Shown here in pieces: positions 2,157 to 36,999 of a DNA stretch of 64,000 nucleotides. The notes under the pieces were generated by a model that was not told the DNA's origin, ran no database searches, and worked only from the letters and a program-made list of their open reading frames with translations. The position numbers were made by a program, and so were the translations under genes. The stretch lies in the NCBI RefSeq assembly GCF_000315625.1, contig NW_005434637.1, positions 567,013 to 631,012 on the forward strand, in the 5' to 3' direction. Every line of letters begins with the position of its first letter. Position 1 is the first letter of the stretch. Source of the stretch: Guillardia theta CCMP2712 (taxonomy: Eukaryota; Protista; Cryptophyta).

Positions 2157-3252
2157 ATGGTAGTTCGTTGTGAGTTCTTGACCATTTCGCATCGCTCCAG
2201 ACCTCCCCGACGACTTCAACAAACGTTGTGTAGCTTTCCATGACGGCAAAGAATCATGAAGACACCAAGCCGGCAATAGTATCGCAGACGTCTGTATGTA
2301 AGATCTCAGAGTAATGACAAGCACTGCTGTGTATTGGGGGTCTTGATTGGTGCGCAGGAAAACTTTCATTGTGCTCCTCCGTTCTCGGACCGATTCCATT
2401 TGTTGTGAGGATGGCGAGTCTATATACCCATGTGAATTGGTATTATGTGACGGCCGAAAGGCGTGGAAAGGAGAGCATGGAAGTAAGATTGAATTTTTGT
2501 TTGTCGGTCTCAGCCTGATGCTTGTCACAGCTGAAGGCAACTCCAAGAAAGTTCGTGAACTGTACTTAGGTCTCGAGACGAGACTGCTATCCCGTGATTG
2601 CGACGGAAATTTAGGCTCGATATCCTTTGATGAAGAGAAAGGGATACTGCGTTTCGAAATGTCACCTGAAAGTGTCGGCAAGAAGAGGAAAAATGTGCGT
2701 TGAATTGGCCGATCTTGTAGTGCCTGAAGCATTTCAGGAGGAATTGGAAATATCGTTGACCAAGGTTGACAAAGTGAGAGATATTCAGGTCAATCTCGGG
2801 CATCGTGTTGTGCTGTCACCTCTCTCTCTCTCACTGATAGGCACCATCAGGACATCATAAAGGATTGCGCAAGGATTAGACTGCGAGAATTGAATCGCCT
2901 CGATCAAGATTGTGATGCCATGCGGTGTCCCACCAGACTTTTGAGGTATGGCATTTTGAATTTCCTTGCAGGACCTCTGTGAATATCAAGCAATGCGAAG
3001 CTCGGGAACTGATATCTCAGTTGGAGGAGGACGTGGACAAGGTACGTTCAACGGCAACAGTGCACTCTGGCATGACGCGATGGTCCCGGAAGGTCAAGGA
3101 GCGCAAGAAGGTTCTCTATCAGAAGATCCGACTTCTCATCAATGCTAAACGTGTAAGTGTAAGGGTATCGCTGAGAGGCAAGAACATTTGATGTTGAGAG
3201 GCAGGCGAAGTTGAACGCGCTGAAGAGGGAAGCTACTAGTTCAAACACTTAA
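2157..3252 (+). CDS. XRCC4: XRCC4-like non-homologous end-joining factor, multi-exon, 5' end uncertain
   Basis: Head-domain motif ELVLCDGRKAWKGE (cf. L-TDG--AW-G); coiled coil; spliced C-terminus KKVLYQKIRLLINAKR|AKLNALKREATSSNT* matches the XRCC4 ligase-IV-binding helix (LYKRFILVLNEKKTKIR in human). Stop TAA 3250-3252. Confidence 0.65.
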
Positions 3253-3355
3253 TTTATCTGTATAGTATGTTGGAATTTCCTGGAGTGTAGACGATTGATG
3301 GCTGAGATGACAAAGGGAATCTCCCCGAAAATATCGTACAAAAATCTCATTCCAG

Positions 3356-5255
3356 TTAAGGTTGATGAATATCAACTATCAAGGCGTTCGTTCCGGTTAG
3401 GTAGAGGCATGACGTGAAGACTTCGGGACACCTGCCAAAGGTCTCAGAATTCAGCCCTCGCCGTAGTAGAGATCTTGATCGATCGCTTTCAATCTCTCCG
3501 ACCTGCGTTGCAAGCTCGGATAAAGTACTGTCGCGCACTTTCGGAGTCCACTCATTCGCCTTGCAGGAAATCACTCGGGGCACATCGAGATCAGACTGCT
3601 CACCAGCGCAGAATATTCTGAGGTGCTTTTTCGAATTTCATCAGATTGAATGTAATCTTTTGCGAACTCGCGAAATTCCCGGAAACTTCTGATCCCTGTT
3701 CGTTTGCAAAATACCCACAGTGCAGCGCTTGAAGAGGTCAAAACAATCAAAGTTGCGATGAGAAACGCCTGGACACATCTTGTTACACAAATATGATCGC
3801 AGTACGAATCAGCAACGGTTACCTTCCACGCCAATGCCGTTCCCTCAGCCTTTCGATCTTCAGCGAACTCATCCGAGCCTTCTTGAACCCCAAGAATTCT
3901 CAACTGATTATTCAACTCCCTTATCTACCACACTTGTCACGCTCAACCAATTTTGTCAATGATCGCAAACCACCTTCATCATGTATTTTTCCCTCTCTTC
4001 CATCATCCTTATGATTTCTGAATTGGTTTCAGGATCTACGGTTTCACTCCTTGACTCTGATCCACTGACCAGTCAATTTATCAATCAATACCATAATGGT
4101 ATACCCAGTCTCGCCGATTGGGCGGCAGCTGCGAAGACTTTCTGGCCTTGTATTTCGCCATAACGAAAGAATTTGAAACGATTTCTCGAGATTTCAAGCA
4201 GTATCTGTTGCAGTTATGTTAATCAAGGAAACTTACGTCCACTTTGGAAACAGATTCGCACTTTAGAATATCTTATCCAGCTGCCAGGCCACCAGATGTA
4301 TGGAGTATCATTGAAAGTGTTTCTCGTCCATATGCTTGAAGAATCTTCATGTTTCCTTCCACTCACAGTTCCTTTAGACTGGGATCACTCGCAGTATACC
4401 GCCATAGTTGAACGCAACATACCAGGCAGGAGCCAGTGATACTTTCTCTTAAACTCTGAATCAGACATATCTCCAATTCCTGCCTTGAATGGAGTGTCAG
4501 GTGATACACATGGACCATAATATGATAAAAGATTACAATCGATTTCATGAAGCGAATTTCTTTCTCCTCTGGCGTCGGCTCCCTTTTCACTCTCTCCTTC
4601 GGTATTGCCCTAATGGAACCGTCCTGCTCCACGACAATGCGGAATCCACTTTGATCGCTGTTGGTATCCTCCTTGGAAACAGCAACCTGCGACTTTCTGG
4701 ATTTCGCCAATCTTTGCCAGACGGAGGCAGCAGCGATAGGGCCCACAACATCTACACCGGAAAACTTGTCTTCGTCAAGATGCTCCTACCCCATGCAACA
4801 CATCACACTCTCGCCAAAGGTCATGTTGTTTCATACCTTGGGGATTGCTGTAGTAAGCTGCTCCTGATTCAATTCTCTTCTGCAATAGCGTCTTGTCAGA
4901 GTGATGCCGGTGTATCGCGATCATTGCAGAGGGTTAGCTTGCATTGCTAGACAACACACCTCATCCTGTCCATCGATGACCGCTGAAGAGATTCGGCATA
5001 ACGGTGTTCTTCTGCCGTCGGTTTGTATGTAGAGAGAGCGCAAGACAGCGTTTGAACATTTTTCTGGAAAGAGCGAAATAAATCATCAGCACAACATGGC
5101 TCATGCAAGCGGAAATGTGCGATCATCGAATCATCGCCAACCTGAAAAGCACGACGATCAAAGCTTACGGTCTTCACTATTCTGTTGCTGAAGCTCTTCC
5201 TAAAGAAACGCGCTTCAGTCTCATAGATTATTCGTCCTCTTCAAAACTCTCACAT
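3356..5255 (-). CDS. Hypothetical multi-exon gene (possibly two genes); C-terminal part resembles TMEM242/DUF1358 membrane proteins
   Basis: Spliceable exons MKSFSNRIVKT|VGDDSMIAHF...; EHLDEDKFSGVDVVGPIAAASVWQR...; distal exons AEGTALAWK|AFLIATLIVLTSSSAALWVFCKRTGIRSFREFREFAKDY give one TM helix plus a G-x-x-S-x-x-EFR pattern like TMEM242. Linkage across 4200-4480 is unresolved. Confidence 0.4.
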
Positions 5256-7068: not shown

Positions 7069-7316
7069 AATCCCGTAGAATGAATGAGGTCAAATGTGAG
7101 CGAGTTGAAACTCATCGAGCCAGGCATGCTGTGTGAGGTTTTTATTCAATCAAGAAACAGTCGAAGACCGCTCAAAAATCCACACTTCACAATAGTTTGT
7201 AACTGCACATAACGCATTCCAGCGATTCATGTAACATCACAGAAAAAAAAAAGAATAAGTTGTGGTGAAAAGTTTACAAGGTTGTTGTACACATCCAACC
7301 CGAGCAATGAATGTGC

Positions 7317-10300
7317 TCACCATGCCTCCAGAGAAGACAAAGTGCACTTGCTCCTCGTGAATTCCTGCCGATGACATCAGACTTACAAGTCGTCTTCAGA
7401 ACTAACAAACAACGATCAAACCTTGTCAGCGGCGCTCCTGGCGTAAAAGTTTGCGCAGATCACGTTGCTACACATCTGGGAAAGACTCGGGTTGTCCACC
7501 TGAGGGCACAGCCATCGAGGTCAGCAGCGAGTCCAGCCGCTCCTCCCACCATCACCCGTGTGCACAGCTGGCATTGCTTCCACAGGGCGTTGCGAGAGTG
7601 CTGGGTTTCGATGAGCGAGGCCTGAGCGGCGAGCACGTGGTCCTCCTTGTCAGCCTCGCAGTCGCTGCAGAGGATCCTTGGGGGCTTGTCCGACTGCGCG
7701 CTCGACTGCGTGACGGACTTGCTGCAGCCGATGCACTTGTGGCCCTTGATGATGTAGTTCCTCATGATGTTGCTGCTCGGCTGGAAGTGCTTGATCAGCC
7801 TCACCCCGCTCCCCATCGATCGCGACGAGTGACCAAAGATCCGAGCCTCCGCGTTCGGGACCAGGACCTGCAGGTAAGCACGTCAGGCCCGTAGCTCCCT
7901 CATGCGGGCGGCCGACACCTCGAAGAGCTTCACGATCGGGTTCTTGAGCTGGTTGTTGACGTACCACTGTCAAGCTCGTCAGGCAGCTCAGGAATAGGCG
8001 CAAGACCCTCAACCTCGTAGTCGACGTTCAGCTCGTTCTTGACCGCGAACGCCGGGTCCTCTACGCTGTCGCAGGTTCTGTAGACTTTTTCTGTCGAGTT
8101 GATGACCTGGACGTACTGCAGCCTCTCACCTGTTGCCGGGCTGTTTCTTCCTCTCTCGTTCATTCGCTTCACAAGCTCCATGTGCGGGGCTCGTCCTTTG
8201 CTGCCATCCTTCCCCACAGGCCTGCAGAGAACAAGTTTGACAAGAGGGACTCGTCCTTCAACCAGCTCCGAGACTCTCGTCCGCACGAGGCTGATCGCTT
8301 TGTCGACATCGGGAGGCGAAGTTCGCATGACGACCTCGAGGCACTCGTTGTAAACTTCCTGGACGAAGGGACAAGAGTCCCTGCGGACGGTCTCTATGCC
8401 CTTCACGTCGATCTTCTCGGGGGACTGTGCCGAAGACGAGAACATGAGCCCGGCGTATCGCTTCTTGGAGAAGAGGAGGTAGGGGCAGTAGACTTTCTCG
8501 AATTCCAGCTTGATTGGAGCTGGAAACGTCTTGGTGACAGCCTGCGCCGCTCGCTGACCAAAGTCCATCGCCTGCTCGATGTCCTTGGCGGAGCTACCGG
8601 GAAGGTGAAAATCGATCATCACCGAGTCCGTGTCCCCGTACACGACTGTAGCTGCGCATGCATGCTGTGCCGTGAAGTCTCTCTCTATCAGACTGCGAGT
8701 CCTGTTGATCAGATCTCGCCCTATCGCCGTCACGGTGGCGGCGAGTGGCAAGCAGGGCAGGTACCCGTTGGTGGCGCCACAGAAGCCATAGATTGAGTTG
8801 CAGGAGATCTTGTACGCCAGCTGGCGGCCGTTGAGGATTTTCTTCATCTGCTGGTCCGTCTGCCCCTGCATCGCGAGCTTCGCGTCCTTGCGAGCCTTGA
8901 GCAACCTCCGCAGGATGCGAGGAAGGATCCCGTCGTGCTCGCGCCCGTCAGGGTCCGTCCAAGATTGGATGAACTTGAACTTCGCGCCTCCCACCTGATC
9001 CTCGTTCGAGCCCGAGACGTCAAACTCCAAGGTTCGAAGCCGCTGCTTGTCAGCCTCCGCCTGCTCGCCAGGCTCTCTCACCAACGTCTCGTACGACAGG
9101 TTGTAGGCGATGATGATGCTGGAACAGCGTCAGACTCCTCGGATTCTTACACCTTCAGCCCTCCTACCTGGGATATAGAGAAGCAAAGTCCAGCGTGCAG
9201 ATGGGAGACCAGTAGCTTCCAGTCTTGGCATTCAGAACTGTCGCACCTTGGTACGAGGCTCCACCCCCCTCGCTGCTCTCAGGACTTCCCTCCCCGGCCC
9301 TCTCCTTGTGTTTATAGGGGATCAGGTAGTCCATGTCCCGGCAGGCCCGACACAACTGGCTCAGCACCTTGTACTGCTGCGCATGCTGAACGAGCTCGTT
9401 GATCAGAACGCCGGTGACCCTCGCCATCTCCACCAGGTTGATCAGCAGCTCGAGCTCCCCGATGAGCTTCAGCGGCAATGTAGCCCTGCATAAACGTGAG
9501 CAAGAGCAAGTCCAGCCGTCCAGCCACCTCTGGATGACGTAGAGGGCAACGTTGGACTTCTGGTCGATGCCGGCTGCGCTCAAGGCCTCGAGGTCCTCGT
9601 CGTGGAGGAAGACTTCATCTCGGTCGAAGAAGTGCTGGCAGGCAAACAAGCTTGTGAGATGACAAAGGTATCGAGGGCTCCCGCGTTTCACCTTGGCGAC
9701 AGCTTCCAGCGAGTAAGACCGGAGCTTGTGCTCGCGCTCGATCTCTCTCTGCAGATCTATCACGATCCTCCCTGGAATCTTGCTGCAGAGCTGCTGGGCC
9801 ACGTTGTGCATCTTGGTCCTTCGCTGCTTCGCCTTTGATGGGTCCCCCTTGAGTCTTCCAAGAGAGCAGTCGCATCCCATTCCCAACTCCTGCAAGCAGA
9901 ACTCACGCGCAAGGACACGAGCGGGCAGGAAGACCTCGATCCTGTCAAACAGCAGGGACAGGGCGTTGCCTCCATAGACGACCACCAGGTCAGGGTCGAT
10001 CTCCTTGGTTATGAAATCGCAGAACTTCTTAATCATCCGTCGCTCGTCGTCGAACGCTCGGATCTAACGTGGGGAGCCGTCAGGGTCAAGAGGCCTGACT
10101 GGAGCCGCACCTTGAGGTAACTCGAATCGCTCGAGACGATGGACTTGATACTCCCGACAGAGAAGATCACTTGCCTGGACCAGGTCTCTCAGCAGGGAGG
10201 GGAGGGGGCAGGAGGGTTCAAGGATCAATCACATGCTGATTGGAGGGTCGAACTTCTTCTCTAGAGCTACTCCAATGAAGGAGATCTCCTGCGTTCCACC

Positions 10301-12714
10301 TGCACTTCACTTCAGATGGGGTGGAACGGCGTCTTCCTCCTCACCTTGTGCTCTCGAAGCAAGGTCAATGCTGACGGTCGTGACGGGCGCAATCCTTGAC
10401 CAACGATCCTCCCTGGCGTCAAGATTGCAGATCGCGAGCTGCTGAGATCCCGTCAGCGGGCAAGAGGAGGGAGGCGACTAAGCAGCACATCTGCGAGATT
10501 CACTGAGATTTCCGTCCTGCAGGAAGACATCTTGCCGCCGCTCCAGCCGCAGATCTGACAGCAGTTGAGAAGCAGCTTCTGCATGTTCAGGACTCACGTT
10601 CTCCGCTTCTAGATCGTTGGACAGCACTTGGTAGGTTCCTCCCTTGACCACTACCCATCCGGCAGACTAGGGGACAGAGTCACGACAGGGGGTAATGGCG
10701 GAGCTGGAAGGACCTGAAGGTTGTAGTCCGACAGAAATCGCATCGTTGGCTCGATATTCGCATCGTAGAGTTCCAGCGATACCTCGCCGTGGGCGATACT
10801 TGACTGGGCTCGCGATGAGATGCTTTCAAGTCGGCGATCAATCAAAGGCCTTGTCAAGATCCTCAGCATGTCCTGAGAACGGCAGAATGTAACAAGCTGC
10901 ACGTGCACATCATGAGATCACGTTGTAAAATTCTATAGAGGTCGTGCTCAGCTTTGCAAATTTCAATCTCTGTGAAACCGATCAAGAAACGAGGTTGCGT
11001 ACAGTAGACAGGGCAACCTCGTCGTATCTTGAGCCAAACAAGTCCTTCTTAGTTGTTTCCTCCATCTCCAAATTCTTCCCGATCTACATGAGTATGAGCT
11101 CAACGAAACTCTCCTCACGCTCACACACCGTCGAGGTCACTTTCTCCAGTATGACGACCTGCGAACATGAACTTCAGACGGCAGGACCTTTCGGAGCAGC
11201 AGCTACTTTGAGGAGATTCCACTCTCCGTCTGATAGCTTAGAGGGTCTCTTGACATAGAGATAAGGCCTGAAACCTCCTGATCCAGACACGTCAGAGCTT
11301 CGAAATTGAACTTCACGAACAACCTGCTCGGACAAGGATGCTTGTCCCATCTGCGAGGGTTCCGAACAATCTCATGGTAACAGCCTGCTAGAAATGAGAA
11401 GCTGATATGGTAAACTTCAGCGATACTGGTAATCCCGGGTCTTTACAGGCGATGATATCCAGCAACTGAAAGGAAATGTCTTGAGTGCAGTCCGGATGGA
11501 GGCTGCAGCAGAATCACACATGAACATCGAAACGAATGAGAGAGACCTTTGAACTTCGGAAAAACTAGAAGACAAGTGACCTCCTTTGTGGTTGTCATGC
11601 GCTATCTGACTTCCTGACGGTATCGACTCCTGGTTGTGCTCAGAAGCGGCCTGAATTGTGGGGGGCAGGTTGGTGGAATTCGCAGGTTCTTGAATTTGAG
11701 ATGAAATCGAGCTACTCAGCATGTCAGTTAAAAGAGACTTCTTCTCTCTCAGCTCTTCTGGTGTTCTGGAGAAGATCAACTCAAGTTCGCCAAGGCTGTG
11801 ATCTAACCACAGGATCAGTACCGCTCGACTTCAGCCCCCGGGCACATACCTTCGTGAGTGGAGTCGCGAGCCTGCGCTTCTGACAAGTCGCGCCGTGAGC
11901 ATGTCTCAGCAGCATGGCAAGCAGTTGGCCGGGCATGTGAGTCATGGAAACTCAATTTCGCACATCCTGCTACACCACTTGAACAGGTCGACGAGGATGC
12001 AACCCACTCACCACTCTCATCTCCTTGCTTCGTCGCTTCGCCATCCCGAACACTATCCACGAGATGATTCATCTGAGCACCATCTCCAACATGCATTCTC
12101 TGCTCAGAGGTAGTTCTCGATGAAGAACGTGACGAATGTGACGAATCGACTTTTGAAAGTGAACACAATCGTTTGTTACTGCTCGTTGATTCCGAAGAGC
12201 ATTGGGAACATATGTCCACATTCTCCTTGATATCACCCTCGGGGTCACATAGCAAATTTGACGACTGAGAGTTTTGAGAGACTTTTTTCTGCATGGATGA
12301 AGGGGTTGCACAGAAAGAATCGCTAATTTCGCACTCGAAACTGGACATAAAAACTATCATCAGGGCAAATAAACATGTCTGGGTGACCTACCTATCTATT
12401 ATTTGACTCAAAGCCCTTTTCTTCCTTGCTACTTCGCCTTTGTTCTCAGAATTGCGCTGCAATTTGGTCCAAGATTTTGAGAGTATCAGCCTAGATGGCT
12501 GATTGCTTGCACGACTGGGGGTTGGACGAGGATCGCTTGAAAATTTCGTTGAAGACGTGAACTGCTGAAAGTGTCACATTACCAGATGTGAAGTGAACAT
12601 TACCTTGGAACTTGATGAGATCTTTGAGGAACTCAAGAGAGATTCGCGTTGATTGCATACTTCACTCTGCGTGAACGGAATGAAGCCTTCATCCTGGTCC
12701 TCTTCGTCTGACAT
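7317..12714 (-). CDS. Family-B DNA polymerase, Pol delta catalytic-subunit-like paralog with inactivated 3'-5' exonuclease and long low-complexity N-terminal extension
   Basis: Region II LDFASLYP|SIIIAYNLSY, region III RQLAYKISCNSIYGFCG, region I YGDTDS (8623-8640), KLEFEKVY..SKKRYAG, KGIETVRRD; Pol-delta-type N-terminal MRLFGTLADGTSILV..GFRPYLY; C-terminal CysA (CIGC..CSDC) and CysB (LWKQCQLC..CSNVICANFYAR); ends SSLEAW* at TGA 7317-7319. Putative start MSDEEDQDEG at 12714. Confidence 0.9.
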
Positions 12715-25566: not shown

Positions 25567-26062
25567 CTCATGAGAGCAAGGCACAGAGCAAGGCAAGCCT
25601 GAAGGTAGGCAAGGTTTCGCCGAGCATTTTTTTTAGGACTTCGAGTCAATCAGATCGATGACTAGCTACATCACAGAAGCTGCCGAAATACTCTTGGAGA
25701 CATTTTAAATTCCGATCAGAATTTTGGAACTTCCAAATGCATTAGGAACTGTTGACTTTATGTTCATATTTTTTCAGTACCTTAACGTACAACGAACTTT
25801 TTTTTCTTGATTCTTTTTTCCTCCCTTGGGTTGTTCATCAGGAGACGCGCCGCCTGCCAGCAAACGTCGAAATCCTTCAGACTACCCCTACCCCCTCTTG
25901 ATTCACCCCCACCCCTCTTTCTATACCTCAACACCCACTCTCAGATTGATTTGGACCCCTACCCCCGTGGAGGTTTTTCTCCACTCCTACCCCTTGTCGT
26001 ATCATGCTAGTCATGTCGAGGGGATCGGGAAGCAGGATGGTCGCGCCGTGATCGGAGTGAGG

Positions 26063-29000
26063 ATGAGGTTGTTGAGCGCTCAGGTATTGTGTGTACTGCT
26101 TCTCATCCTGCCGAGCGAGATCAGCACCAACGAAGAGTTGTCTCAGCCGGTTATCGGCGCTGCATTGAATTGGAAGTATGATCCATCACCTGGTAACAGA
26201 TCGGTATATTTCGATTTGCAAATTGCAATGGGTAGGTCAAGGTATTGTACGTACCAGAAAGGTAGCGCTGTCATGTGCACAGATGTGGAGGACAGCAGTG
26301 CATGTACTAGGCCAGCGTGTCAGGTTGCGAAAGTTCATGGTATCCTGTGTGTGGGGCAGGTGGTAGCCAATCGAGAAGGGTTATATTTGAAGTACTCTGC
26401 TGAAAACGGGTGCCCTTCTGATTTGGATTTGTCTGACATCTCTTCTTCTGGGCGTGTGGGTAAAGTAAATGAGTTTCAGGTAGAGAACCTATTTGACAAC
26501 CTTGAAACATGTGCGACCCCGAGCAGCAATACGTCAGGGATAGTGACAGGGCGCTTGAAGCATCAAGTCCTGATCGATGACGACACCATTGCTGTCGTTG
26601 CATGGTTATTTGACGGCAATGATCAGTTTCAGAACTCTGACATGGGGGAAGTCACAAGTCAAAACTTTGGAAGTCTGGAGTGTTTTTTGTCAACTGGCTT
26701 TCCTCTCTTTCGGATCAATGGCTCTTCATTGAATACCAGCAAAGGGTATGCATATATTCCAGTCTGTGATGGGGCAATCAAACAATCTTGGTTTCCCTCA
26801 GTTTCATTGTTTCAATTCAAGCCTTCAGGGGCCCTCAGTCAATTATTCTTTTCGTTCCGCATGAGCTGCTTTCACCCGTCGTTTGTTGATTACGGATGTG
26901 AAGGCACTTTGACAGCGTGTCCAGACTTTGTGGGTAATGTGTCAAATACGTTTCATTCAAGCAACAACTCTGAATCGCAATGCTTACTCAGCACGTGCAA
27001 TGAGAAGTTGTTGAACCAGTCGTTATTCTTTCTTCCCTTCACATTTTATACTTATACGCAATTTTCCTGTTCGAACATCTCATCTCACATCGCTCCCCAG
27101 ATTTTGACTTCAGGAGAATCGTTGGACAACTTTTTCGTATGTACAGTTGGCCAATCTTGCGAGATTCCAATTAACGTTACATGTCCCATAGACGGTTGTA
27201 TCCTGACAAGCGCTGAAAATTTTGACGCTCTCAAGCCAGATGAAGTCGTTGAAATAGATCGGCAAACAAGCGGCAATGTCATTCACGCGTTTTACATTTA
27301 CAAAATTCATAAGTTTGAAAATGTATACGATTTCAAAAACAGTGCAGCTGTTTTCTCGAACTGCTTCGTAGCCAAAAAGTTGAATTGCAGTGTTAGTCTT
27401 CCAAGCTGTCAGTCTCGTCCAGCGTGCGTGACGATACGATTGCAACCAGCAAGAAGCGTTTACAACTTTTATTTTGAGCTTCCAACTCCCACTGTATACA
27501 TTTCAACTTGTTTTCAAGAAGATGTTTTGGCGGTGGAGTTGAAATTCAACACTTCATTTCTTGATTCATACATCCTGGAAGTTTCAGGTGGGGGCTCAGA
27601 TTGCTTCTATAGAATCGATCAAGGCATGTTTTCACGATCGGCGCATTCATTATGCATGTCTTTCACATCATTGTTGGAAATTTCTGAGGTCAAAAATCCG
27701 TATCGATTTCGAATCTCGGTCAAGACTGACAAAGGGTATTTGCACGGGGGTGCTTCAAATGAAATATCTGTATTTGATTCAATTACATGTCGAGAAGCTG
27801 ACTTGCTTGCTGTAACTTGGCATAGTCAAAAGTTGAGAGTGTATGCAAGGATGCCAAATGGTAATCCTTATGAAATCTTTTCTAAAGTCACAGGATCTCC
27901 TCAGCAAGGTGCGATTGCTATGGATGAGCGACACAGCACGCTGTATTCGTTGGTACCCAGTCAGGAAAATGTGGAAGATTCAGTTTTGCTAAAGATAGAT
28001 CTACGAGGTTCCCCTTCTGTTGCAACCTCGTCACAGATTTTCAGGAATTTCTCTGTCTGGAATCTTGAATACAACGAGGCATATGATAGCTTTGTGGCTG
28101 TCAAAGTTTTTGGTTCAGAATTCACGGTATTCACTTTCAATTTTTCAAGTGCCAATGTTCAGGATTTGCTCCAATTGGAACGTCCAATTCAATTCGGCAT
28201 TTCAACTTTTTGTACGAGATACCAATTGTACTTTCTCGTGGACGCTCTTGACTCGTCCGTTGTTGAAATAGATCTTCAGAACAAGAGTAAGAAGTATCAT
28301 TCGCCATATCATTCTTCATCAAGACTAATTTCAATTTCGTTCCTTACAGAGCAAAAGATTTTATATGGAGTTTCAAGTGGCTGGCCTCATGATTTGCGCT
28401 TAAGTTTTCTAAAATTAATAGATGGGGCATGGCAGGTCGTGAATACAACATTGTTGGACTCGTCTCTTCATGATTCTGTCAATGCCATGGATCTTGAATG
28501 CTTTGCATGGTATCGGCTCAATGTTTCTCAGGGATTTGAAGTTTCTGTATTTGATATGAGCTCTTGGAAACTACTGCAATCGATCCCTTACCGAGAAGTG
28601 GTCGGAGATGTATTTTACCTATTTCCACAGAAAAATGTGAAGCCAAATATACAAGCATTGCTTCTACCTTCGATCAATACTAACCTTCAAGTTGTCACAG
28701 TTGCTGGAAAGCACTTTGGGTTCAGAGACTTGAACCCTGAGATTAAAGTTGATGATCTTCTCTGTGAAAGAACCAGTTGGTACCGAGATGACATGCTTGT
28801 GTGCGTACTCCCACATTTTTTTCAAAGAAACAAGGCAAACCAATATGAGTTCAAGGTCGAAATCCAGGACAAAATTTCTTCACCTCAGGCAACCGCTTTA
28901 TACCTGGAGTACTGGATTGGAATTGTCCCTTCATCATCACCAGTTTTTGTTGGCTCGAGTTACTTCACCATTTCCGGGTTTGGTTTTCGTGAGCCCTTCA

Positions 29001-32000
29001 GCGATTACAAGTGTGCGTTTTCCACGATACAATATACCGCTGTTTCCTCAGAGCTTGTTGAAGGACAGAAGAACAAACTTGTCTTCAGGTTACCTTACTG
29101 GTCATCAGCAGCGCGCACAACAGATGTATATTTGCTGCGAAGTAACAAACATGATTTGAACAATTATGCCACAAGTTTGATTCAGTCGAACTCAACGATC
29201 TCATTTCATATGACTGAGACATGGAAAGGGATTGTGCCTTCAGCCGACTTTTTGCCTGCCTATGGAGAAGTGTTCTTCACTGTGTTGGGGGATGGTTTTG
29301 ACTTGGATGAGAATTATTCTTGTACTTTAAATTTTCAATTCAATTCGTTTTCGACGATTGCAATTGCCGCAAACCATACAGCAGTATTCTGTAACTTCTC
29401 ATACCGTCTCCTGGACTCTGGTATTGCGAACGTTTCTTTGCTAAGAAACGAACAGGTAGTACTATTTTGGCAAGCCGGTGATCATTTATTGAAGGAACAT
29501 TCAATTCCTGTATTGTTCAAGGAGGTCTGGATTAATTTCAGTCCCTTATCTGTAGTCGGAGTGGCGAATCATGAATTCATTGTGGATGGGTCCGGTTTTC
29601 GGGACAGTTACGCTTGTGTATTTCATTCATTAAATAGAGGTGATGAATTGCGGTGCAATGCTACTGTGAATGACTTCGGCAGATCATTGTCATGCTGTGC
29701 TGCTCAACAATTAAGTTTGAATACCAGTGGACAATATTCTGTAACGATCGTATCCTTGTCAAAAGATTCTCCTGTCAACAAGTACGGATCAGAGGCGAAG
29801 CTTGAATTCTATGAGAAGGTGGAGAGCATCCTACCTGTAGACATAGAAATCAGCGGCATGAAATCGTTCGATGTTCGTGGATTTTGCTTTCAGCCAGGAA
29901 AGAATTATGAAATCTCACTCCTAGTCCAGAAGTACGACTTTAACAACGCTACTGTCTACGAAAGTTCATATTCAAGTCAGAGTTTTTCGTTTATTAGTCC
30001 AAGACAGTTGTTGTTTTATGTGGACACAAGCCTCTTTGTTTCTTGTATTGCAAACGTATCATTCTTTGCAAATGTTGAAAGTCATCGTAGTGCTCTCATT
30101 GCCAACCCTGGCCTCATGATCCACTTCAAAGAAAGAGTGATTTCGCTTTCTTTGGTTGAAGTATATGCAGCAGAAATTACTAAGATCCTGTTTAAAACTT
30201 CAGGATTCAACTCGGCACAGTCATATTCTTGCAAATTCTCACGGAATACAACCTCGAACGAGCTTGGTAACGAGGTTTTATTCCAATTCCCAGCAACCGT
30301 TTTGAACGCATCGTATGTGGAATGTTTGGTTAATATTTCCATTGCAGGCAAGGTTCTCGCTCAGATAGCAAGAACAGACAACACAATTATTGACTCAGGG
30401 GTTGAATTAAATGTGTTGGAATATTGGGACAAGTTGTATCCTGTCTATGCATCGACTGGGGGTGCAATAATCACGATTTTCGGCGAAGGATTTGATCATG
30501 CTTCAAGGACTTATCGATGCAGTTTCACACAAGAGAACGTGATTTACAATGCCACTGCTGATCCTGGTTCTGGATCAACCACTTTGGTATGTACTTTGCC
30601 GAGTTCGTTTCTCGCTGGATCCGTCACAGTTACTGTTAGTTCACAAGATCCTAGGGATCGCATTTACCCAATTCAGCTAAGGAGCGGGGGTCAAGGACGA
30701 ATCATTAAGCTTATTGAAGAGATCAATCAAATATTGCCTACCCAATTTTCTGCCCGTGGTGGTACGAATCTGACCGTTGTAGGTTACGGTTTTGTGCAAA
30801 CTGAAAAGTATTTCTTCAATTTCAGGAACATTCGAGTGACAAACGATTGCATTAGACATAACCAGAGCTATCTTGTTTGTCAGACTCTTCAATTCAATCA
30901 CAGTTCCAATACAGATATTCTATATCTTATGAACTATGAGGTTGGATATAATGTGACGCTTCATTCAGTCAAGATTTTTTCAGAAATTGAATCCATAATC
31001 CCTTCAAGTGCTTCAGCATATCATGGAGCAATCTTGACGTTGACTGGATATGGATTTGATCCAATCAGAACATACATAGTTAGGGTTGCAGGATCATCAG
31101 CTGTACAAAAAAATATGTCCTTTTCCGCGACTGCAAGGAATCAAAATGAGATTTTTTCGAACTTTGCGATCTGGACATTTGAGTCAGGAATGACTTCCAT
31201 TGAAGTTTTAGAAAATAATGATTCTGTCTCACTTGCATCAAGTCTTCAAAAATTTCTCATCTTCCCTGAAATCATCAGTATTCAGCCGAACCGATATGCT
31301 GCCGGATTACAGCAAGAGTTAACTGTCTACGGAGCAGGATTTGATCCTACTAGGAATGACTCCACTTATAGATGTCTAACTACGGCAGGCACTGCATCCA
31401 ATCTCGTTCCAGCCGCTTCATACACCAAGCTTCTTTGTAATCTTTCTGCGTGGACTTTCGAAGCCCGCTCTACCTCCTTCTATTTGTTAGACTCTTTTTC
31501 ACAACTAAACGTGACAGGAGTTCTGGATATCAACTTCACAGAATCCGTGTCTGGTCTCCAACCCAATGAATCTTACTCTCAGAATGGAATCTATATTACA
31601 ATATTTGGTGCAGGATTCAACAGGGGTTCGAAATACAACTTAGAATTTTATCGCCTCTACACCGATGAGAAGTTGGAGGTTACAAATATGACAAAGATTG
31701 AGGAGAAATATATCGTGTTTTTCATTTCTTCCCCTTGGAAATTCGCTGGTGGCGATGTCAATGTTACTCTGAAGAATTCTGGATTTCATGTTCAGAATTT
31801 ACAACGATTCCGTTTCAATTCTGTCATAAATTTTCTTGAACCAACAACTGGTTACTTTTTTGGATCCGTCGTACAAATTGCAGGTTTCGGATTCTTACTC
31901 AATCAAAAAACTTATACATTTCGCGTTACGGCTGGAGCAAATTCTTCTTGGAGTATTCAGTCTGAATCAGTAGAAGCTTCTTCGCCTCAAGTAATCGCTT

Positions 32001-35000
32001 TCCAAATACCAGAATGGAAGTGGGCTCTGGATGGAAATGGAACCTTCACTTTCTCTGTATTTGAAAGTTTCAGAAAAGTTCTTGTTGCTGACTTCTCAGA
32101 TCATTTTGAGATCAAGGTGGGATGGATAGGCATCACTCATCAATCGAGGCTGTCTTTCAATGGAGGAGATAGTATCACTGTGTTTGGAGGTGGATTCAGT
32201 TCACGAGTTGATTTCTTTTGCAGATTCACACCAAGTGATAGCCAGGTATCGAATATATACAAAGAAGAACCGGCATTTGTTATGGATTTGAGGAGATTAT
32301 CATGTCAGACGCCGTCATGGATCTTTGCAAGCAGCTTTGCGACATTTTCCCTTTGGTACTCTGTTGCTGGTCAAAAACGAGAAGTGAATCAACTATTATA
32401 TCCCGTTGGCTCTACAAAAGTATTCTTCGAAGGGTATCCTGCACTGCTTGGTGGCACCTTGAATGGTCCCATACGAGGACAGCAGAAGGTTACTCTTGAT
32501 GGAAATAATTTTGGGATGGTAGACCTGACGCCAAAAGTCCGACTTGGAGACACAGCATGTGAGTTCACGACATGGCTGTCGTCTACACAGATGGTCTGTG
32601 GTGTACCATCGAAGCATGGGGTTGCAGTGACCGCAGATGTTATAATATCTATCGGACCATATCGGGTAGGAAGCAGAAGTCATGCTTTTACCTTCGATGG
32701 CCCTTCTTTGAGCGAAATATCTGTGACGAGAGTAAACGCGACAAACAAGCTCTCGGAATGGTTCACAATTTGGGGCATGAACTTTCTACTATACGACAGC
32801 AGCCCGGCAGCCAGAACAGGGGGGACAGCCTGTGAAACAACAATTTGGTTTTCAACTAGTTCTATGAACGCCAAAAATGCAGCTGGGAATCAAGACTATG
32901 TTCCCGTTCATATGACCGTTGATTATTCAAGCTCAGTATCGACCCTATCACTTGCGTTTTCTTTCGACCATCCGGAAATTTCTTCTGCAGGTTTTTTGGC
33001 AAATGCTGCACAAGCTGGATCAATCTCGCTCTCAATCTGGGGATCTGATTTTGGTCTTGCTCAGATGTCCATGTCTGCGAGAAATGGTGGAACGAATTCG
33101 GAAAGCACAAGGTGGCGTTCTTTCACCTCAGTTACGATACGTGCGGTACGATCCGGGCTGACTACCAAAAGTGCACAAATATCGCTGGGTGCAACTAGGT
33201 TCTCAACCTCTACAGAACTATTCACAAGTGATGGATTGATTTTATCAAGTACAAAGGCGAAGAACAGCGCATACGGCCAATCTGTTAAACTCTTTCTACA
33301 AGGTTTCAGTCTTTGTCCGTTCGAATCGAGTGGCAAGTCATCGATTGGATCATCAATGGCCAGGGCCACTATGTGGCTGTCCACAACCTCTCTTCAAGCA
33401 CATACTATTGCAGGAATTGCTCACACCAAGAAAGTTCAAGTCAGTGTTTCAAGAACTTTATATTCACTTTCTGAGGCTTACAGCTTTTCCTCGCCTACCA
33501 TGTCTCTTGTTTATTCCAAGATTGATGCTGGAGCTTGGACTGAAATTCCAGTATCCTGGAATTTTGTGGGGCAAGACTTTCAAGTACTTTATCGTATGAA
33601 CCAAATCATAAAAAGAACATTGTCAACAGGTAATGCTTTTCAACATACCGATTTGCATTCTGACTTAATTTGTCGAACAGATGACGATGTTTTTTCGGTT
33701 GACTGGTTGATCCACGACAACGCATTAGCAACAGTAAATGCTCCATCAAATTGGAATTTTGAAGACATTCAATCAGTCTCAGATCTGCAAAAAGTTCCAT
33801 TTTCTCAGGATATAGTGCAGGGCTCTATCATCACGCAGAGAAGTCAAATCTATGGATCTTACGACAAGCAGGAGGTTGAAGGGACAACTCTAGAATTTGT
33901 TTCCTCGCGCTCATATGCAAGCACGCGATCTACATGGCAGGACTTCACTTTGGAAGTCGTTTTAGTTAATCTCGATGAAAATTGGATTGGAGTCACGTTT
34001 CGTTATGTAGATGACAAAAATTATTATCGTTGGGAGATGAATGCACAAAATAACATCTTGCGTTTGAAAAAACGTAAAGAAGGAATTCTTTCTGTCCTGT
34101 ACGAAAACTCTCAGACAAAGATATATGATAGCAATATTGTTTATCGGATATCAATCAGAGTAATTGAGAACACAGTGGAAGTGTACATGGATGAATTTTC
34201 CAAAGCTCCTCCATTTCCAACTCTTGGGACTTTACTGGTACAAAGAGAAGATCCTGACCTGGGACTATCCAGGAAGGGAACCATTGGAGTTTGGAGTGCA
34301 GGGAGCCTTTTGTCCTGCTTCTTGAGTGTAGGGGTCTATCGTCCATTGCAAGTTGCACGAATGAGTAACCTGATTGTAAATGGTGGAGGTGAAATGACTC
34401 TGCATGGAAATAACTTTGGTCATTTTGCCTCACTCAGACATCGTATTCGACATACCGCGGGTGAAACAAGTCGATGGATATCTGACAGTAGTATTTGGTG
34501 TAGGAACCAGCCTGGACAATTTGCAACCAACAGATTATCGATCTCCCTGATGACCGTTGGTACCATTTCAGAAATGCTTTCGTATAATCATCCTGCTTTG
34601 AGTTGCAGCATCAGGTCGAATACTGCAAGTACTGGATCCCAGAGATTGACTGTTTTTGGCAATAATATGGCCGAAAAGTTTTTCAGTCAACAAATCAGGC
34701 GGGCAGGAACAGCCTCAGAGGCTACTCGATGGTTTACAACTTTTGAAATACCTTGTAAGGGGTGTTTTGCTGAGAAATGGGCCTCAGATACGTCAATTCA
34801 TGGGTATACCAGCGGTGGTATTGGGTCAAGTCAACGATTGATGGTATCAGTTGGGATAATATCTGGTACCATCAGCGATGTGTGCTCCTTTGACGTACCA
34901 ACTTTGAGTGGTTCGAAACGAATGAATGCAATTTCAACTGGCTCTTCAATGGTAACCATAGTTGGACAGCATTTTGCAAACAATGCCAATACAGCAACAG

Positions 35001-36999
35001 CAAGAATAGCAATGAATGGAGGAGGAACATCTTCAGAAGCGACGACATGGATCTCTCAATCTAGTGTAGCAACACGACTGAGTCACATGCACGGCAGGAC
35101 AAGTCTGGCGATTGTTACCCTCAACCAAAAAATTGGCTCAAATACACAAACAATCAGTACCGACACTCAGCACATCAGCACTATATCCAAAAACAACCCT
35201 TCAACAGGCACAACAATGTTGACAATCAAGGGAGCAGGGCTCGGGCTCGGAGGGCCGACGGGAGGGGCGCGGGGGGCCAGGACGGCGTGCGAGGCGACGG
35301 AGTGGGAGTCGGACACGTCGGCGCGGTGTCTGACGGGGTGGGGCTGGGGAGGGACGGGGAGCGGGCGGGCGACGGTGACGGTAGCAGGGAGGGCAGGGAG
35401 CGCGACGGAGGCGTACTCGACCGACGCGGCAAGGGCAAGCTCGCTTGTACGGGCGAACGCGGGGGCGACGGGGTCGTCGAGCGTGACGATAGCCGGGGCA
35501 GGGCTCGGGCTCGGAGGGCCGACGGGAGGGGCGCGGGGGGCCGGGACGGCGTGCGATATGAAGGATCGTTGTGGCTGTCAGAAACAAGTCTTGTCTGTCA
35601 TGTTTTCTCAGGGTTAGGTGGCTCGGGTTCTGTTGTTGTTACTACATCGTTGTTGCTTTCTTCGCTGTCTTCCTCGTTTTCGTTTGATAGCCCTGATGGT
35701 CTCATGGTTGTTTCAGCAAACGTTGGTTCGGCGTATGGAAACAGTCTGTATATAGATGGGTCGTTCAGCACGTATGATTTGACCTTGTCATCAAGAATTT
35801 TGTTTACGAGTAGCGAATCAACCCAATGGCTTTCAGAAACAAGTCTTGTAAGCTTACCACCTGCTGGGACAGGTGGGCAACAATCGTTGATTGTAACAGC
35901 TGGTCTGTTGGTATCATCCAGAAGCCAACTCGTCTCTTATGATCAATACAAGATTCTGAAAATTTCATCGGAAAGTTGCCTGGATATCACTTCGACGAAC
36001 ATCTCCTCTGATTCGATCCAAATTGAATATTCGAGCGCTATTCTAACTGTGTCAGGAATCAATTTTGGTAAACAAGACATCACCTCAACCTATCAGATTG
36101 GTCAATCAAGTTGTGCAAGTGTGCAGTGGACCTCAGACACCTCAATTGTTTGCACAACCACGGAGAATGTTACGTCATGGTGGTGCAATGATTGTGTGGC
36201 TGGGAAGTACACGGAGTACATAGACTCTCAGAGTTCCGCATTCAATTGCGTAGATTGCCCGGCACTTTCAACCTCAGCGCTGCGATCAACCTACTGCTGC
36301 GTTTATTGTCAGAATGGCACATGTGACCAGTTGAGTCTGGCGGAAGCATATTCCCTGCCTAACGCCTCGTGCGTACCCACAACTCCCACAAACCACATTC
36401 GAGGGGGAGTGCCATTCGCGTCTAGCTCCTCAGCAGCAGGATGCTCGTTCAGTGGGCAAGACATCGGTGGGCAGTACGAAGGCGCATTGTGCTATTCGAA
36501 CATCAATGACGGGGTCTATGGCAGCGGAAGCCAATGGAAATCGAATGCTGATGACAATGCATCGTTTGTGGGGGTTGTGTTCAATTCAACTCAGAGAGTG
36601 AAGTATGTTTCCATCGTGGCGTCGTTAACATCCGATTACAACTGCACACTAGGTGCAGTGTGGCAACTACAGTATCTTCCTCTGAATTACTCCAACGCTA
36701 AACCTGAATATGGGTCTGCATACTGGTTCAATGTTGGAAATTTCAGCCTGACAACGTGGGGAAGGAACATATTTGAGATAAATGGAACAATCCTTGCAAA
36801 TGCAATTCGGCTATATTCAACGGCACCTGCCAGCAGTTGCTTAGATGAACTAGAAACGTTCAGCGATGGCGACACCATTCCGAGCGTGAATACGACATGC
36901 CAGGAAGTTCTTGATACCAGCTACGGATCAGAGGGGACGTGCGAAGCAGTATGTGCAGGCACTCGCGTTTACAACTCTTCTTCTTCCACTTGTGTGTAG
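26063..36999 (+). CDS. Giant secreted IPT/TIG-repeat protein with beta-propeller-like region, ConA/DUF1080-like lectin domain and C-terminal discoidin-like domain; frameshift at ~35556
   Basis: Signal peptide MRLLSAQVLCVLLLILPSEIST; many TIG repeats (P..G..ITI.G.GF..Y.C.F, later G.NFG..R.G.TACE.T.W.S.T...C); lectin-like segment WQDFTLEV..WIGVTFRYVDDKNYY..GTIGVWS (~33930-34330); repeats continue in a different frame (ORF 35287-36999: EGSLWLSETSLVC...); no C-terminal TM seen. Confidence 0.85.
35231..35556 (+). repeat. G-rich coding cassette with internal ~62-bp direct repeat spaced by one TIG unit (264 bp)
   Basis: GCAGGGCTCGGGCTCGGAGGGCCGACGGGAGGGGCGCGGGGGGCC(A/G)GGACGGCGTGCGA at ~35234 and ~35498; composition sharply different from the AT-richer flanking exon. 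Confidence 0.9.

What the first reader, a model, noticed from the sequence alone, without database searches (positions are those of the whole stretch)
7317..12714. Proofreading-dead Pol delta paralog with intact polymerase site and CysA/CysB
All three exonuclease motifs have lost catalytic acids. ExoI is SIDLAS (canonical SFDIEC; ~10355-10372), ExoII is DPDLVVVYGGNALSLLFDRI (canonical GYNIxxFDLPYL; ~9940-10000), and ExoIII is YVIQR|ATLPL (canonical YCLKDAYLPL; ~9528-9542). LDFASLYP and YGDTDS are intact and the C-terminal Zn/Fe-S cysteines are retained. Pol alpha and zeta are the known exo-deficient B polymerases, but the N-terminal domain, EMARVTGV, LPCL and the terminal W are delta-type. Inference: an extra error-prone or strand-displacing polymerase that may still bind the B subunit.
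Basis: partly seen in the sequence, partly recalled or inferred. Interest (0 to 1): 0.8.

Follow-up and report, generated by a model that had tools for sequence, protein, structure and literature searches.

The report
Proofreading-dead Pol delta-like polymerase gene
The alga Guillardia theta keeps, transcribes and conserves a second-type DNA polymerase delta gene whose error-correcting site is destroyed while its DNA-copying site is intact, and relatives in other protists share the defect.

Summary
On the minus strand, 12714..7317, I assembled a 20-exon, 1418-residue open frame in the Guillardia theta nuclear genome. The public model XP_005832100.1 is only its residues 789-1375 and misses the exonuclease half.

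- **Active sites:** polymerase motifs A, B, C and KKRY are intact, and so are both C-terminal cysteine modules. Three of the four exonuclease carboxylates are gone (ExoI DxE to DxA, ExoII D to S, ExoIII D to R). No splice variant restores them.
- **Not a pseudogene:** against a 95.6% identical relative, exons differ 3.0% and introns 10.0%. All indels lie outside exons and dN/dS is about 0.1. One intron is confirmed by an RNA contig, and Hanusia phi has a transcript.
- **Relatives:** the defect is shared with a group of uncultured eukaryotes. These genes sit with exonuclease-intact relatives in a well-supported clade that carries the C-terminal domain. That clade lies beside, not inside, canonical POLD1, and shows no affinity to Pol zeta or giant-virus polymerases.
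- **Function (inferred):** a nuclear, non-proofreading polymerase for specialised synthesis that uses Pol delta's accessory subunits.
- **Not verified:** a canonical POLD1 or REV3 in this genome.

The parts
7317..12714 (-). Whole coding region of the Pol delta-like gene: 20 exons, 19 introns, 1418 codons plus stop
   Evidence: Model assembled from GT..AG introns, giving one open frame. Residues 789-1375 are identical to XP_005832100.1.
11447..12714 (-). Exons 1-4: serine-rich N-terminal extension of about 345-370 residues, then the start of the conserved N-terminal domain; RKKR at residue 84; no signal peptide
   Evidence: The extension is 22% Ser. Maximum 12-residue hydrophobicity in the first 90 residues is 0.23. 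Splice sites at 12603-12565 and 12391-12341 are predicted only.
11803..11849 (-). 47-nt intron (GT..AG on the minus strand), the only one confirmed by RNA
   Evidence: A contig of run X8 joins 11802 to 11850 (table 5).
10529..11387 (-). Exons 5-9: Pol delta N-terminal domain (VTMRLFG...GGFRPYLYV, ...YDANIEPTMRFLSDYNLQ/SAGWVVV)
   Evidence: tblastn to locus L001 and comparison with P0121. Introns 11104-10897 (208 nt) and 10528-10442 (87 nt) are the least certain of the model.
10349..10375 (-). ExoI remnant VSIDLASRA (canonical SFDIEC): Asp kept, Glu replaced by Ala
9938..9991 (-). ExoII remnant DLVVVYGGNALSLLFDRI (canonical D..TGYNI.NFD.PY): catalytic Asp replaced by Ser
   Evidence: The L001 ortholog reads DMVVTYERETLATLVNRL.
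9470..9544 (-). ExoIII remnant LYVIQR|ATLPL (canonical YC.KDA.LPL), split by the 42-nt intron 9527-9486: Tyr kept, Asp replaced by Arg
   Evidence: The homolog P0430 has no intron here and reads ALVMSQRSQLPL with no insert.
9635..9691 (-). 57-nt in-frame intron upstream of ExoIII
   Evidence: The relative L004 carries a 2-nt insertion here, which would shift the frame if this stretch were coding.
8014..9485 (-). Polymerase domain exons (EMARVTGV, motif A LDFASLYP|SII, motif B KISCNSIYGFCGA, LPCL, motif C YGDTDS, KKRYAG), with intron 9167-9119
   Evidence: PF00136 at 300 bits; human POLD1 at 234 bits; motif alignment.
7317..7966 (-). C-terminal domain exons: CysA (C-x2-C-x18-C-x2-C, 7735-7658), CysB (C-x2-C-x11-C-x4-C, 7573-7455), ending ...LEAW
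   Evidence: PF14260 at 31 bits.

Best explanation
This is a functional nuclear gene of Guillardia theta. It encodes the catalytic subunit of a divergent Pol delta-type DNA polymerase, which I call the 'delta-2' lineage. The protein can still polymerise DNA but cannot proofread.

**Shown**
- The gene is complete, spliced, transcribed at a low level and under purifying selection.
- The polymerase active-site motifs and both C-terminal metal-binding modules are intact.
- Three of the four exonuclease carboxylates are substituted.
- The same inactivation is present in Hanusia phi (ExoIII) and in an uncultured eukaryote lineage (ExoII and ExoIII). A further genome-encoded member of the wider clade has also lost ExoI and ExoIII residues.

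**Inferred**
- The protein lacks a signal peptide and carries a basic RKKR patch, so it probably works in the host nucleus.
- Through CysB it probably docks on the Pol delta B subunit, and it probably uses PCNA.
- It would then carry out synthesis where proofreading is a hindrance: extension past lesions or mismatched primers, or repair and recombination synthesis. That is a functional analogue of Pol zeta, which arose independently.
For: - **Gene model:** 20 exons in one frame, 1418 residues. An exact match to XP_005832100.1 covers residues 789-1375.
- **Family:** PF00136 300 bits and PF14260 31 bits. Human POLD1 scores 234 bits against 139 for Pol zeta.
- **Motifs:** motifs A, B, C and KKRY are identical in pattern to proficient Pol delta, while ExoI, II and III are altered.
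- **Selection, compared with L004:** exon divergence 3.0% against 10.0% in introns. All indels lie in introns or the UTR. dN/dS is 0.09-0.11 over 747 codons. By part it is 0.06 in the exonuclease remnant, 0.16 in the polymerase domain and 0.075 in the C-terminal domain.
- **Transcription:** a spliced RNA contig removes 11849-11803, and a few raw RNA reads map. Hanusia phi has a transcript that is 82-84% identical.
- **Shared inactivation:** seen in L001 and P0430. The more distant clade member P0181 has lost ExoI and ExoIII residues.
- **Phylogeny:** the exonuclease-dead clade has support 100/99. It sits inside the delta-2 clade (99/96), which is separate from canonical POLD1 (100/99).
- **C-terminal domain:** CysA and CysB keep the canonical spacing in every delta-2 member.
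- **Targeting:** no signal peptide and no RGG box.
Against: - No biochemical data exist; loss of exonuclease activity is inferred from residues.
- Expression is very low: 5 reads in about 20 million read, of mixed direction.
- Only one of the 19 introns has RNA support, and two N-terminal introns are uncertain.
- I could not show that G. theta has a canonical POLD1, POLD2, REV3 or REV7. So 'specialised extra polymerase' and 'Pol zeta analogue' are not anchored in the gene complement.
- No REV7-binding motif or PIP box was found.
- The position of the delta-2 clade relative to REV3 was not tested in a tree, because no REV3 sequence could be obtained.
Confidence: 0.6

Rival explanations
1. It is a nucleomorph polymerase. 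The protein would be imported into the periplastid compartment and would replicate or repair the relict red-algal nucleus without proofreading, which would fit the fast evolution of nucleomorph genes.
For: Cryptophyte nucleomorph genomes encode no DNA polymerase, and the imported enzyme was still unidentified in 2017 (PMC5443833). In chlorarachniophytes a non-canonical POLD is imported (PMC5635652). So far the named organisms with the exonuclease-dead form are nucleomorph-bearing cryptophytes.
Against: The modelled N-terminus (MSDEEDQDEGF...) is acidic, has no hydrophobic stretch and has no ubiquitin-tail box. No upstream exon with a signal peptide was seen. Another organelle-targeted family-B polymerase was flagged elsewhere in this genome (note s1-437033, untested). 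The taxon of the uncultured orthologs is unknown.
Confidence: 0.07
2. It is a scaffold rather than an enzyme. The protein would be kept for assembling a complex through its C-terminal domain and exonuclease-fold remnant, in the way the inactive half of Pol epsilon is kept, and polymerisation would be dispensable.
For: The C-terminal domain and the exonuclease remnant have the lowest dN/dS, 0.075 and 0.06, against 0.16 for the polymerase domain.
Against: Every polymerase catalytic motif is intact in G. theta and Hanusia and largely so in the uncultured orthologs. The polymerase domain is by far the best conserved part across the clade: 42-49% identity against about 25% for the exonuclease domain. 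The dN/dS differences rest on 3-11 substitutions.
Confidence: 0.1
3. It is the only Pol delta catalytic subunit of G. theta, so the alga would replicate its lagging strand without Pol delta proofreading.
For: I could not retrieve a canonical G. theta POLD1 in three word searches and one exhaustive search. The public record names this gene 'DNA polymerase delta catalytic subunit'.
Against: Those searches list only the top 120-150 of thousands of hits, so a canonical copy would not be visible. Expression is far too low for a replicase in growing cultures. Every supergroup sampled has a canonical POLD1 in a clade that excludes this gene.
Confidence: 0.05
4. It is a gene captured from a giant virus, or a decaying pseudogene.
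For: Pol delta is the closest cellular relative of giant-virus PolB. The language-model search listed giant-virus fragment clusters first.
Against: The best of 89 viral-contig matches is 41% identical, below the cellular relatives at 48-49%. Giant-virus PolBs fall in the outgroup that lacks the C-terminal domain, or elsewhere, and never with delta-2. The gene has 19 spliceosomal introns, a eukaryote-type CysA/CysB domain, no stop codons and dN/dS about 0.1.
Confidence: 0.05

Closest known systems
DNA polymerase delta catalytic subunit (POLD1 / yeast Pol3)
   Same: It has the same domain order: N-terminal domain, exonuclease fold, palm/fingers/thumb, then a CysA Zn module and a CysB Fe-S module. 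It gives the best sequence match of any solved polymerase (234 bits for one exon). The signatures are delta-type: EMARVTGV, LDFASLYPS, NGRQLA.K.S.NS.YGF.GA, LPC, YGDTDSVM, KKRYAG and a terminal W.
   Different: The DEDDy exonuclease site is destroyed (D-A-S-R instead of D-E-D-D). The exonuclease domain is only about 25% identical to others, against 43-55% among proficient enzymes. There is an N-terminal low-complexity extension of about 345-370 residues. The gene branches outside the clade that unites canonical POLD1 of animals, fungi, stramenopiles, Rhizaria, Discoba, Giardia and malawimonads.
DNA polymerase zeta catalytic subunit (REV3 / REV3L)
   Same: It is a B-family enzyme of the delta branch with a retained but inactive exonuclease fold, an active polymerase and a CysB module. 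In yeast that module recruits the Pol delta subunits Pol31 and Pol32 (abstract of PMC3526297, listed). The predicted working mode is the same.
   Different: Sequence similarity is much weaker: 139 against 234 bits. The exonuclease-intact clade member P0121 scores 246 bits against zeta and 748 against delta, no better relative to zeta than a canonical POLD1 does (315 against 1187). The vertebrate-type REV7-binding motif is absent. There is no large insert between the N-terminal domain and the exonuclease domain. The nearest relatives still have an intact exonuclease, so the loss is independent of the one in REV3.
Uncultured 'delta-2' relatives with intact exonuclease (P0121 on locus L003, P0003, P0004/P0276)
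   Same: They are the closest non-orthologous proteins: 48-49% identical in the polymerase exon and in the same clade (99/96 support). They share KISCNSIYGFCGA, NLSYETL, GVLIN.LV and the CysA/CysB tail. P0121 also has a long low-complexity N-terminal extension.
   Different: P0121 has canonical ExoI, II and III (SFDIEC, GYNIFNFDLPY, YCVKD). P0003 and P0276 are fragments without the exonuclease region. Their organisms are unknown.
Nucleomorph-targeted, virus-like POLD of chlorarachniophytes (Bigelowiella natans JGI 138180)
   Same: It is a non-canonical Pol delta-like gene in the host nucleus of a nucleomorph-bearing alga (PMC5635652).
   Different: That protein has a targeting leader, was localised to the nucleomorph and groups with giant-virus PolB. 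This one has no leader and does not group with viral PolB.

Membership tests
Family B DNA polymerase | Match to the family B polymerase domain, with motifs A (DxxSLYPS), B (KxxxNSxYG) and C (YGDTDS) | tested here: met
   PF00136 at 300 bits on exon 7930-9084. The motifs are aligned.
Pol delta catalytic subunit (POLD1/Pol3) | Closer in sequence to Pol delta than to Pol zeta, alpha, epsilon, or herpesvirus or archaeal PolB | tested here: met
   234 bits (human POLD1) against 139 (zeta), 91 (alpha) and 88 (herpes) for the polymerase exon. The exon carrying the exonuclease remnant and the start of the polymerase domain also hits Pol delta best.
Pol delta catalytic subunit (POLD1/Pol3) | Active DEDDy 3'-5' exonuclease site (ExoI DxE, ExoII NxxxFD, ExoIII YxxxD) | tested here: not met
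   The residues are DxA, no Asp in ExoII (Ser), and YxxxR. All 12 canonical and outgroup sequences aligned, and also the clade's exonuclease-intact member P0121, keep the acids.
Pol delta catalytic subunit (POLD1/Pol3) | C-terminal domain with CysA (Zn) and CysB (4Fe-4S) four-cysteine modules | tested here: met
   PF14260. CxxC pairs lie about 207, 229 and 261 residues after KKRY, as in primate POLD1. The fourth CysB cysteine lies across intron 7555-7500.
Pol delta catalytic subunit (POLD1/Pol3) | Falls inside the clade of orthologous POLD1 genes of eukaryotes | tested here: not met
   IQ-TREE with LG+C20+F+G4: canonical POLD1 clade 100/99 and delta-2 clade 99/96, as sister groups when rooted on PolBs that lack the C-terminal domain. 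The same result holds with giant-virus PolBs added.
Pol delta catalytic subunit (POLD1/Pol3) | Assembles with the B subunit (POLD2/Pol31) and PCNA | not testable with these tools
   Only the cysteine modules can be seen. No PIP box was found by pattern.
Pol zeta catalytic subunit (REV3) | Inactive exonuclease domain with an active polymerase | tested here: met
   This is a resemblance in design only.
Pol zeta catalytic subunit (REV3) | Sequence affinity to REV3, and REV7-binding motifs (phi-phi-x-P-x4-P-S-R in vertebrates) | tested here: not met
   Bit scores. The motif is absent by regular expression (consensus taken from PMC4333420, which also notes that fungi lack it). No tree with REV3 could be built.
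Giant-virus (Nucleocytoviricota) PolB | Groups with viral PolB and lacks the eukaryotic CysA/CysB tail | tested here: not met

The most novel reading that the evidence does not exclude
The 'delta-2' clade would be an old, separate eukaryotic B-family catalytic subunit, in effect a fifth type beside alpha, delta, epsilon and zeta. It would have split from POLD1 before the radiation of the sampled supergroups and survive in a few protist lineages. Within it, proofreading was lost in at least one lineage (perhaps twice, if P0181's placement holds) while the Fe-S docking module was kept. That would be an independent replay of the step that produced Pol zeta.
Probability: 0.25. Interest if true: 0.8.

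Novelty: new variant of a known kind. Interest (0 to 1): 0.6.

Why it matters
**Why the case is unusual.** Among eukaryotic B-family replicases only Pol alpha and Pol zeta are known to have given up proofreading. A third case, independent and selectively maintained, inside the Pol delta branch shows that this transition is repeatable. It also offers a natural experiment on what a Pol delta body does once the exonuclease is disabled.

**The public record.** The GenBank model is truncated and simply named 'DNA polymerase delta catalytic subunit'. Surveys of replication genes would therefore count it as the ordinary replicase.

**If the wider clade is old.** It would add a branch to the history of eukaryotic polymerases.

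**For cryptophyte biology.** The gene is one more candidate to check in the still-open question of which enzymes serve the nucleomorph, although the evidence here points to the host nucleus.

Tried and rejected
1. **Canonical POLD1 and REV3 of G. theta.** Three word searches, the exhaustive representative search, earlier scan notes and papers gave no G. theta sequence other than this gene. The searches show only the top hits, so this is no evidence of absence.
2. **Rooting with REV3.** No REV3 sequence could be brought in as a reference, so I compared HMMER scores to solved structures instead.
3. **RNA support.** The one raw RNA run gave 5 reads. Only intron 11849-11803 is confirmed, and the two introns at ExoIII rest on comparative evidence.
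4. **Synteny with the uncultured ortholog locus L001.** None was seen.
5. **Organism of L001, L003, L005 and P0003.** Accession searches in papers found nothing, and cluster look-ups gave no names.
6. **ESM Atlas search.** It returned only generic PolB fragment clusters.
7. **REV7-binding motif and PIP box.** Neither was found; only a partial PxxxPSR in low-complexity sequence, which I do not count.
8. **Reading ELILM as the end of exon 7.** Rejected because no in-phase acceptor follows. I used the GTTGAG donor, giving a 208-nt intron, which is uncertain.


Full report
**Where and what.** Earlier notes of the scan name the genome as Guillardia theta. I confirmed this: the public protein XP_005832100.1 / EKX45120.1 ('DNA polymerase delta catalytic subunit, partial [Guillardia theta CCMP2712]', 587 aa) is an exact substring of my gene model, residues 789-1375. 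The gene is on the minus strand from ATG 12714 to TGA 7319-7317.

**Gene model.**
- I read the minus strand and placed 19 GT..AG introns. This gives one open frame of 20 exons and 1418 residues.
- Sixteen of the introns are 39-59 nt. One is 87 nt and one is 208 nt, and these two, in the N-terminal domain, are the least certain.
- The public model covers only the part from just after ExoIII to the start of CysB. The dead exonuclease is therefore invisible in GenBank.

**The observation.**
- Pfam gives PF00136 at 300 bits for exon 7930-9084. It gives a weak 24 bits for the exonuclease family PF03104, and PF14260 for the tail.
- I aligned the protein with 12 exonuclease-proficient sequences, canonical POLD1 and outgroup, and with the related P0121. 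Motifs A (LDFASLYPSII), B (NGRQLAYKISCNSIYGFCGA), C (VVYGDTDSVMI) and KKRYAG are intact.
- ExoI is SIDLAS (D kept, E to A). ExoII is VVYGGNALSL (no Asp; Ser at its place). ExoIII is YVIQR|ATLPL (Y kept, D to R).
- CysA is C-x2-C-x18-C-x2-C and CysB is C-x2-C-x11-C-x4-C. They have the same spacing after KKRY as in primate POLD1.
- By established knowledge of DEDDy exonucleases, and of the yeast pol3 proofreading mutants (recalled, not looked up here), losing three of the four carboxylates abolishes activity.

**Could splicing restore the acids?** No.
- The two small introns flanking the ExoIII exon are in frame (57 and 42 nt). Reading through them gives ...YVIQRWLDGWTCSCSRLCRATLPL, which still has Arg at the Asp position.
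- The close relative L004 has a 2-nt insertion inside the 57-nt intron, so that stretch cannot be coding.
- The homolog P0430, which has no intron at this point, has no insert there...ALVMSQRSQLPL.

**Is it a live gene?**
- A metagenome contig, L004, is 95.6% identical over 2716 nt.
- Within it, exons differ at 3.0% of sites and introns at 10.0%. Every indel lies in an intron or the 3' UTR, and there are no stops.
- dN is 0.011 and dS is 0.10-0.13, so dN/dS is 0.09-0.11 over 747 codons.
- By part, dN/dS is 0.06 for the exonuclease remnant, 0.16 for the polymerase domain and 0.075 for the C-terminal domain. Counts are small.
- RNA evidence: one contig of run X8 skips 11849-11803, with GT..AG on the minus strand. 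Another contig lies in the polymerase exon, but both come from runs whose RNA status is the index's guess. The single raw RNA run gave only 5 reads among about 20 million. Expression is therefore low.
- Hanusia phi, a sister genus, has a transcript-derived protein that is 82-84% identical. That transcript is spliced at one intron but reads through three others.

**Relatives.**
- The exhaustive search and the word searches show a sharp drop after Guillardia and Hanusia.
- Next comes a group of uncultured eukaryotes: P0129/P0268/P0269 on loci L001 and L002, plus P0430-P0432, about 41-47% identical.
- Their upstream exons also lack the acids. ExoII reads VVTYERETLATLVNRL and ExoIII reads LVMSQRSQLPL, sharing the Q-R with G. 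theta. I could find no DxE.
- A protein from an unnamed NCBI assembly (P0181, GCA_027487435.1) has also lost the ExoI and ExoIII residues.
- The closest exonuclease-intact proteins are P0121 (1605 aa, uncultured, locus L003 with ordinary eukaryotic neighbours), P0003 and P0004/P0276. They share unusual residues with the G. theta protein: KISCNSIYGFCGA and NLSYETL.

**Phylogeny.** I ran a careful IQ-TREE analysis (LG+C20+F+G4, 39 rows, 1004 columns).
- It was rooted on a group of PolBs without the cysteine tail. Giant-virus genome bins fall into that group.
- A 'delta-2' clade has support 99/96. Its members are P0181, then (L001,(Guillardia,Hanusia)) at 100/99, then (P0003,(P0121,P0276)).
- Its sister group, at 100/99, contains canonical POLD1 of animals, fungi, a choanoflagellate, oomycete, diatoms, Blastocystis, Bigelowiella, Reticulomyxa, Naegleria, a euglenid, Gefionella and Giardia.
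- So this is not a recent duplicate of an ordinary cryptophyte POLD1. Long-branch effects cannot be excluded, because the exonuclease-dead branch is long.
- No viral contig is closer than 41%, and none joins delta-2.
- REV3 could not be added to the tree. P0121 scores 748 bits against human POLD1 and 246 against Pol zeta. A canonical Naegleria POLD1 scores 1187 and 315. There is therefore no sign of zeta affinity.

**Domain history.** Identity of the G. theta protein to others is 42-49% in the polymerase domain but about 25% in the exonuclease domain. Proficient enzymes keep 43-55% in the exonuclease domain. The exonuclease fold was therefore released from catalytic constraint long ago. It is now conserved again, presumably as a structural part, as in Pol alpha and Pol zeta.

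**Localisation.** There is an RKKR patch at residue 84. This argues for the host nucleus and against the attractive nucleomorph idea. The 5' exon has no RNA proof.

**Mechanism (inferred).** The protein would be a PCNA-dependent and B-subunit-dependent polymerase without proofreading, used for synthesis that proofreading would abort. Pol zeta docks on Pol31 and Pol32 in yeast (abstract of PMC3526297, listed), so the retained cysteine modules make sharing of the Pol delta accessory subunits plausible.

**Literature.** A survey of B-family polymerases describes Pol delta and Pol zeta as one branch, with only zeta exonuclease-inactive (PMC7544198). My searches found no description of an exonuclease-dead Pol delta paralog.

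**Open points.**
- Whether G. theta has a canonical POLD1 and a REV3.
- The taxa of the uncultured carriers.
- The age of the delta-2 clade.
- A second, related transcript glimpsed in run X8.

Noticed in passing
window 8399-8421 and 8617-8634 (run X8, record 6): A 238-nt contig of a run guessed to be RNA matches only two short stretches of this gene: DTDSVM (18 nt, exact) and PEKIDVKG (23 nt, 1 mismatch). Their spacing is 6 nt shorter than in the window. This looks like a transcript of a second, fairly close paralog of this polymerase in a G. theta-labelled sample; it is neither the Hanusia ortholog nor a canonical POLD1.
   Followed up: partly
window 10204 and 7243: The DNA contigs of run X1 lack 1 base at 10204 (a C-run inside intron 10232-10175) and 2 bases at 7243 (3' UTR) relative to the window. 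These are homopolymer length differences or assembly errors outside the coding sequence.
   Followed up: yes
window 7317-12714 compared with XP_005832100.1: The public gene model covers only residues 789-1375 of 1418. It misses the N-terminal extension, the N-terminal domain, the whole exonuclease region and the last two exons, which carry the last two CysB cysteines.
   Followed up: yes
P0002 (Hanusia phi transcript): The Hanusia transcript is spliced at the motif A intron. It reads through both introns around ExoIII, in another frame in between, and through the intron after ...DYE. It is a partly processed message, which hints at inefficient splicing of these very short introns.
   Followed up: partly
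window 25826-35617 (+), 44644-50511 (-), 52164-62123 (-): Three uninterrupted ORFs of 3263, 1955 and 3319 codons lie in the same window. Neighbouring ORFs carry TIG, discoidin (F5/8 type C) and TPR domains.
   Followed up: no
P0308 and P0222 (Gefionella okellyi, EukProt): The malawimonad Gefionella has two Pol delta-type proteins: one ordinary and one divergent long-branch copy that still has the exonuclease motifs. Extra Pol delta copies may be more common in protists than assumed.
   Followed up: no
L007 (IMGVR GVMAG-M-3300017792-3, 275 kb), match 3001-3927: A giant-virus genome bin encodes a 1322-residue PolB with a CxxC-rich tail. In the tree it falls among cellular Pol delta rather than with viral PolB. 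It is either a host-derived gene in a virus or a mis-binned eukaryotic contig.
   Followed up: no
window 7365-12603, introns of this gene: Sixteen of the 19 introns are 39-59 nt long, and several are multiples of three without stops. ORF-based reading therefore runs straight through them, for example at 9691-9635 and 9527-9486.
   Followed up: partly
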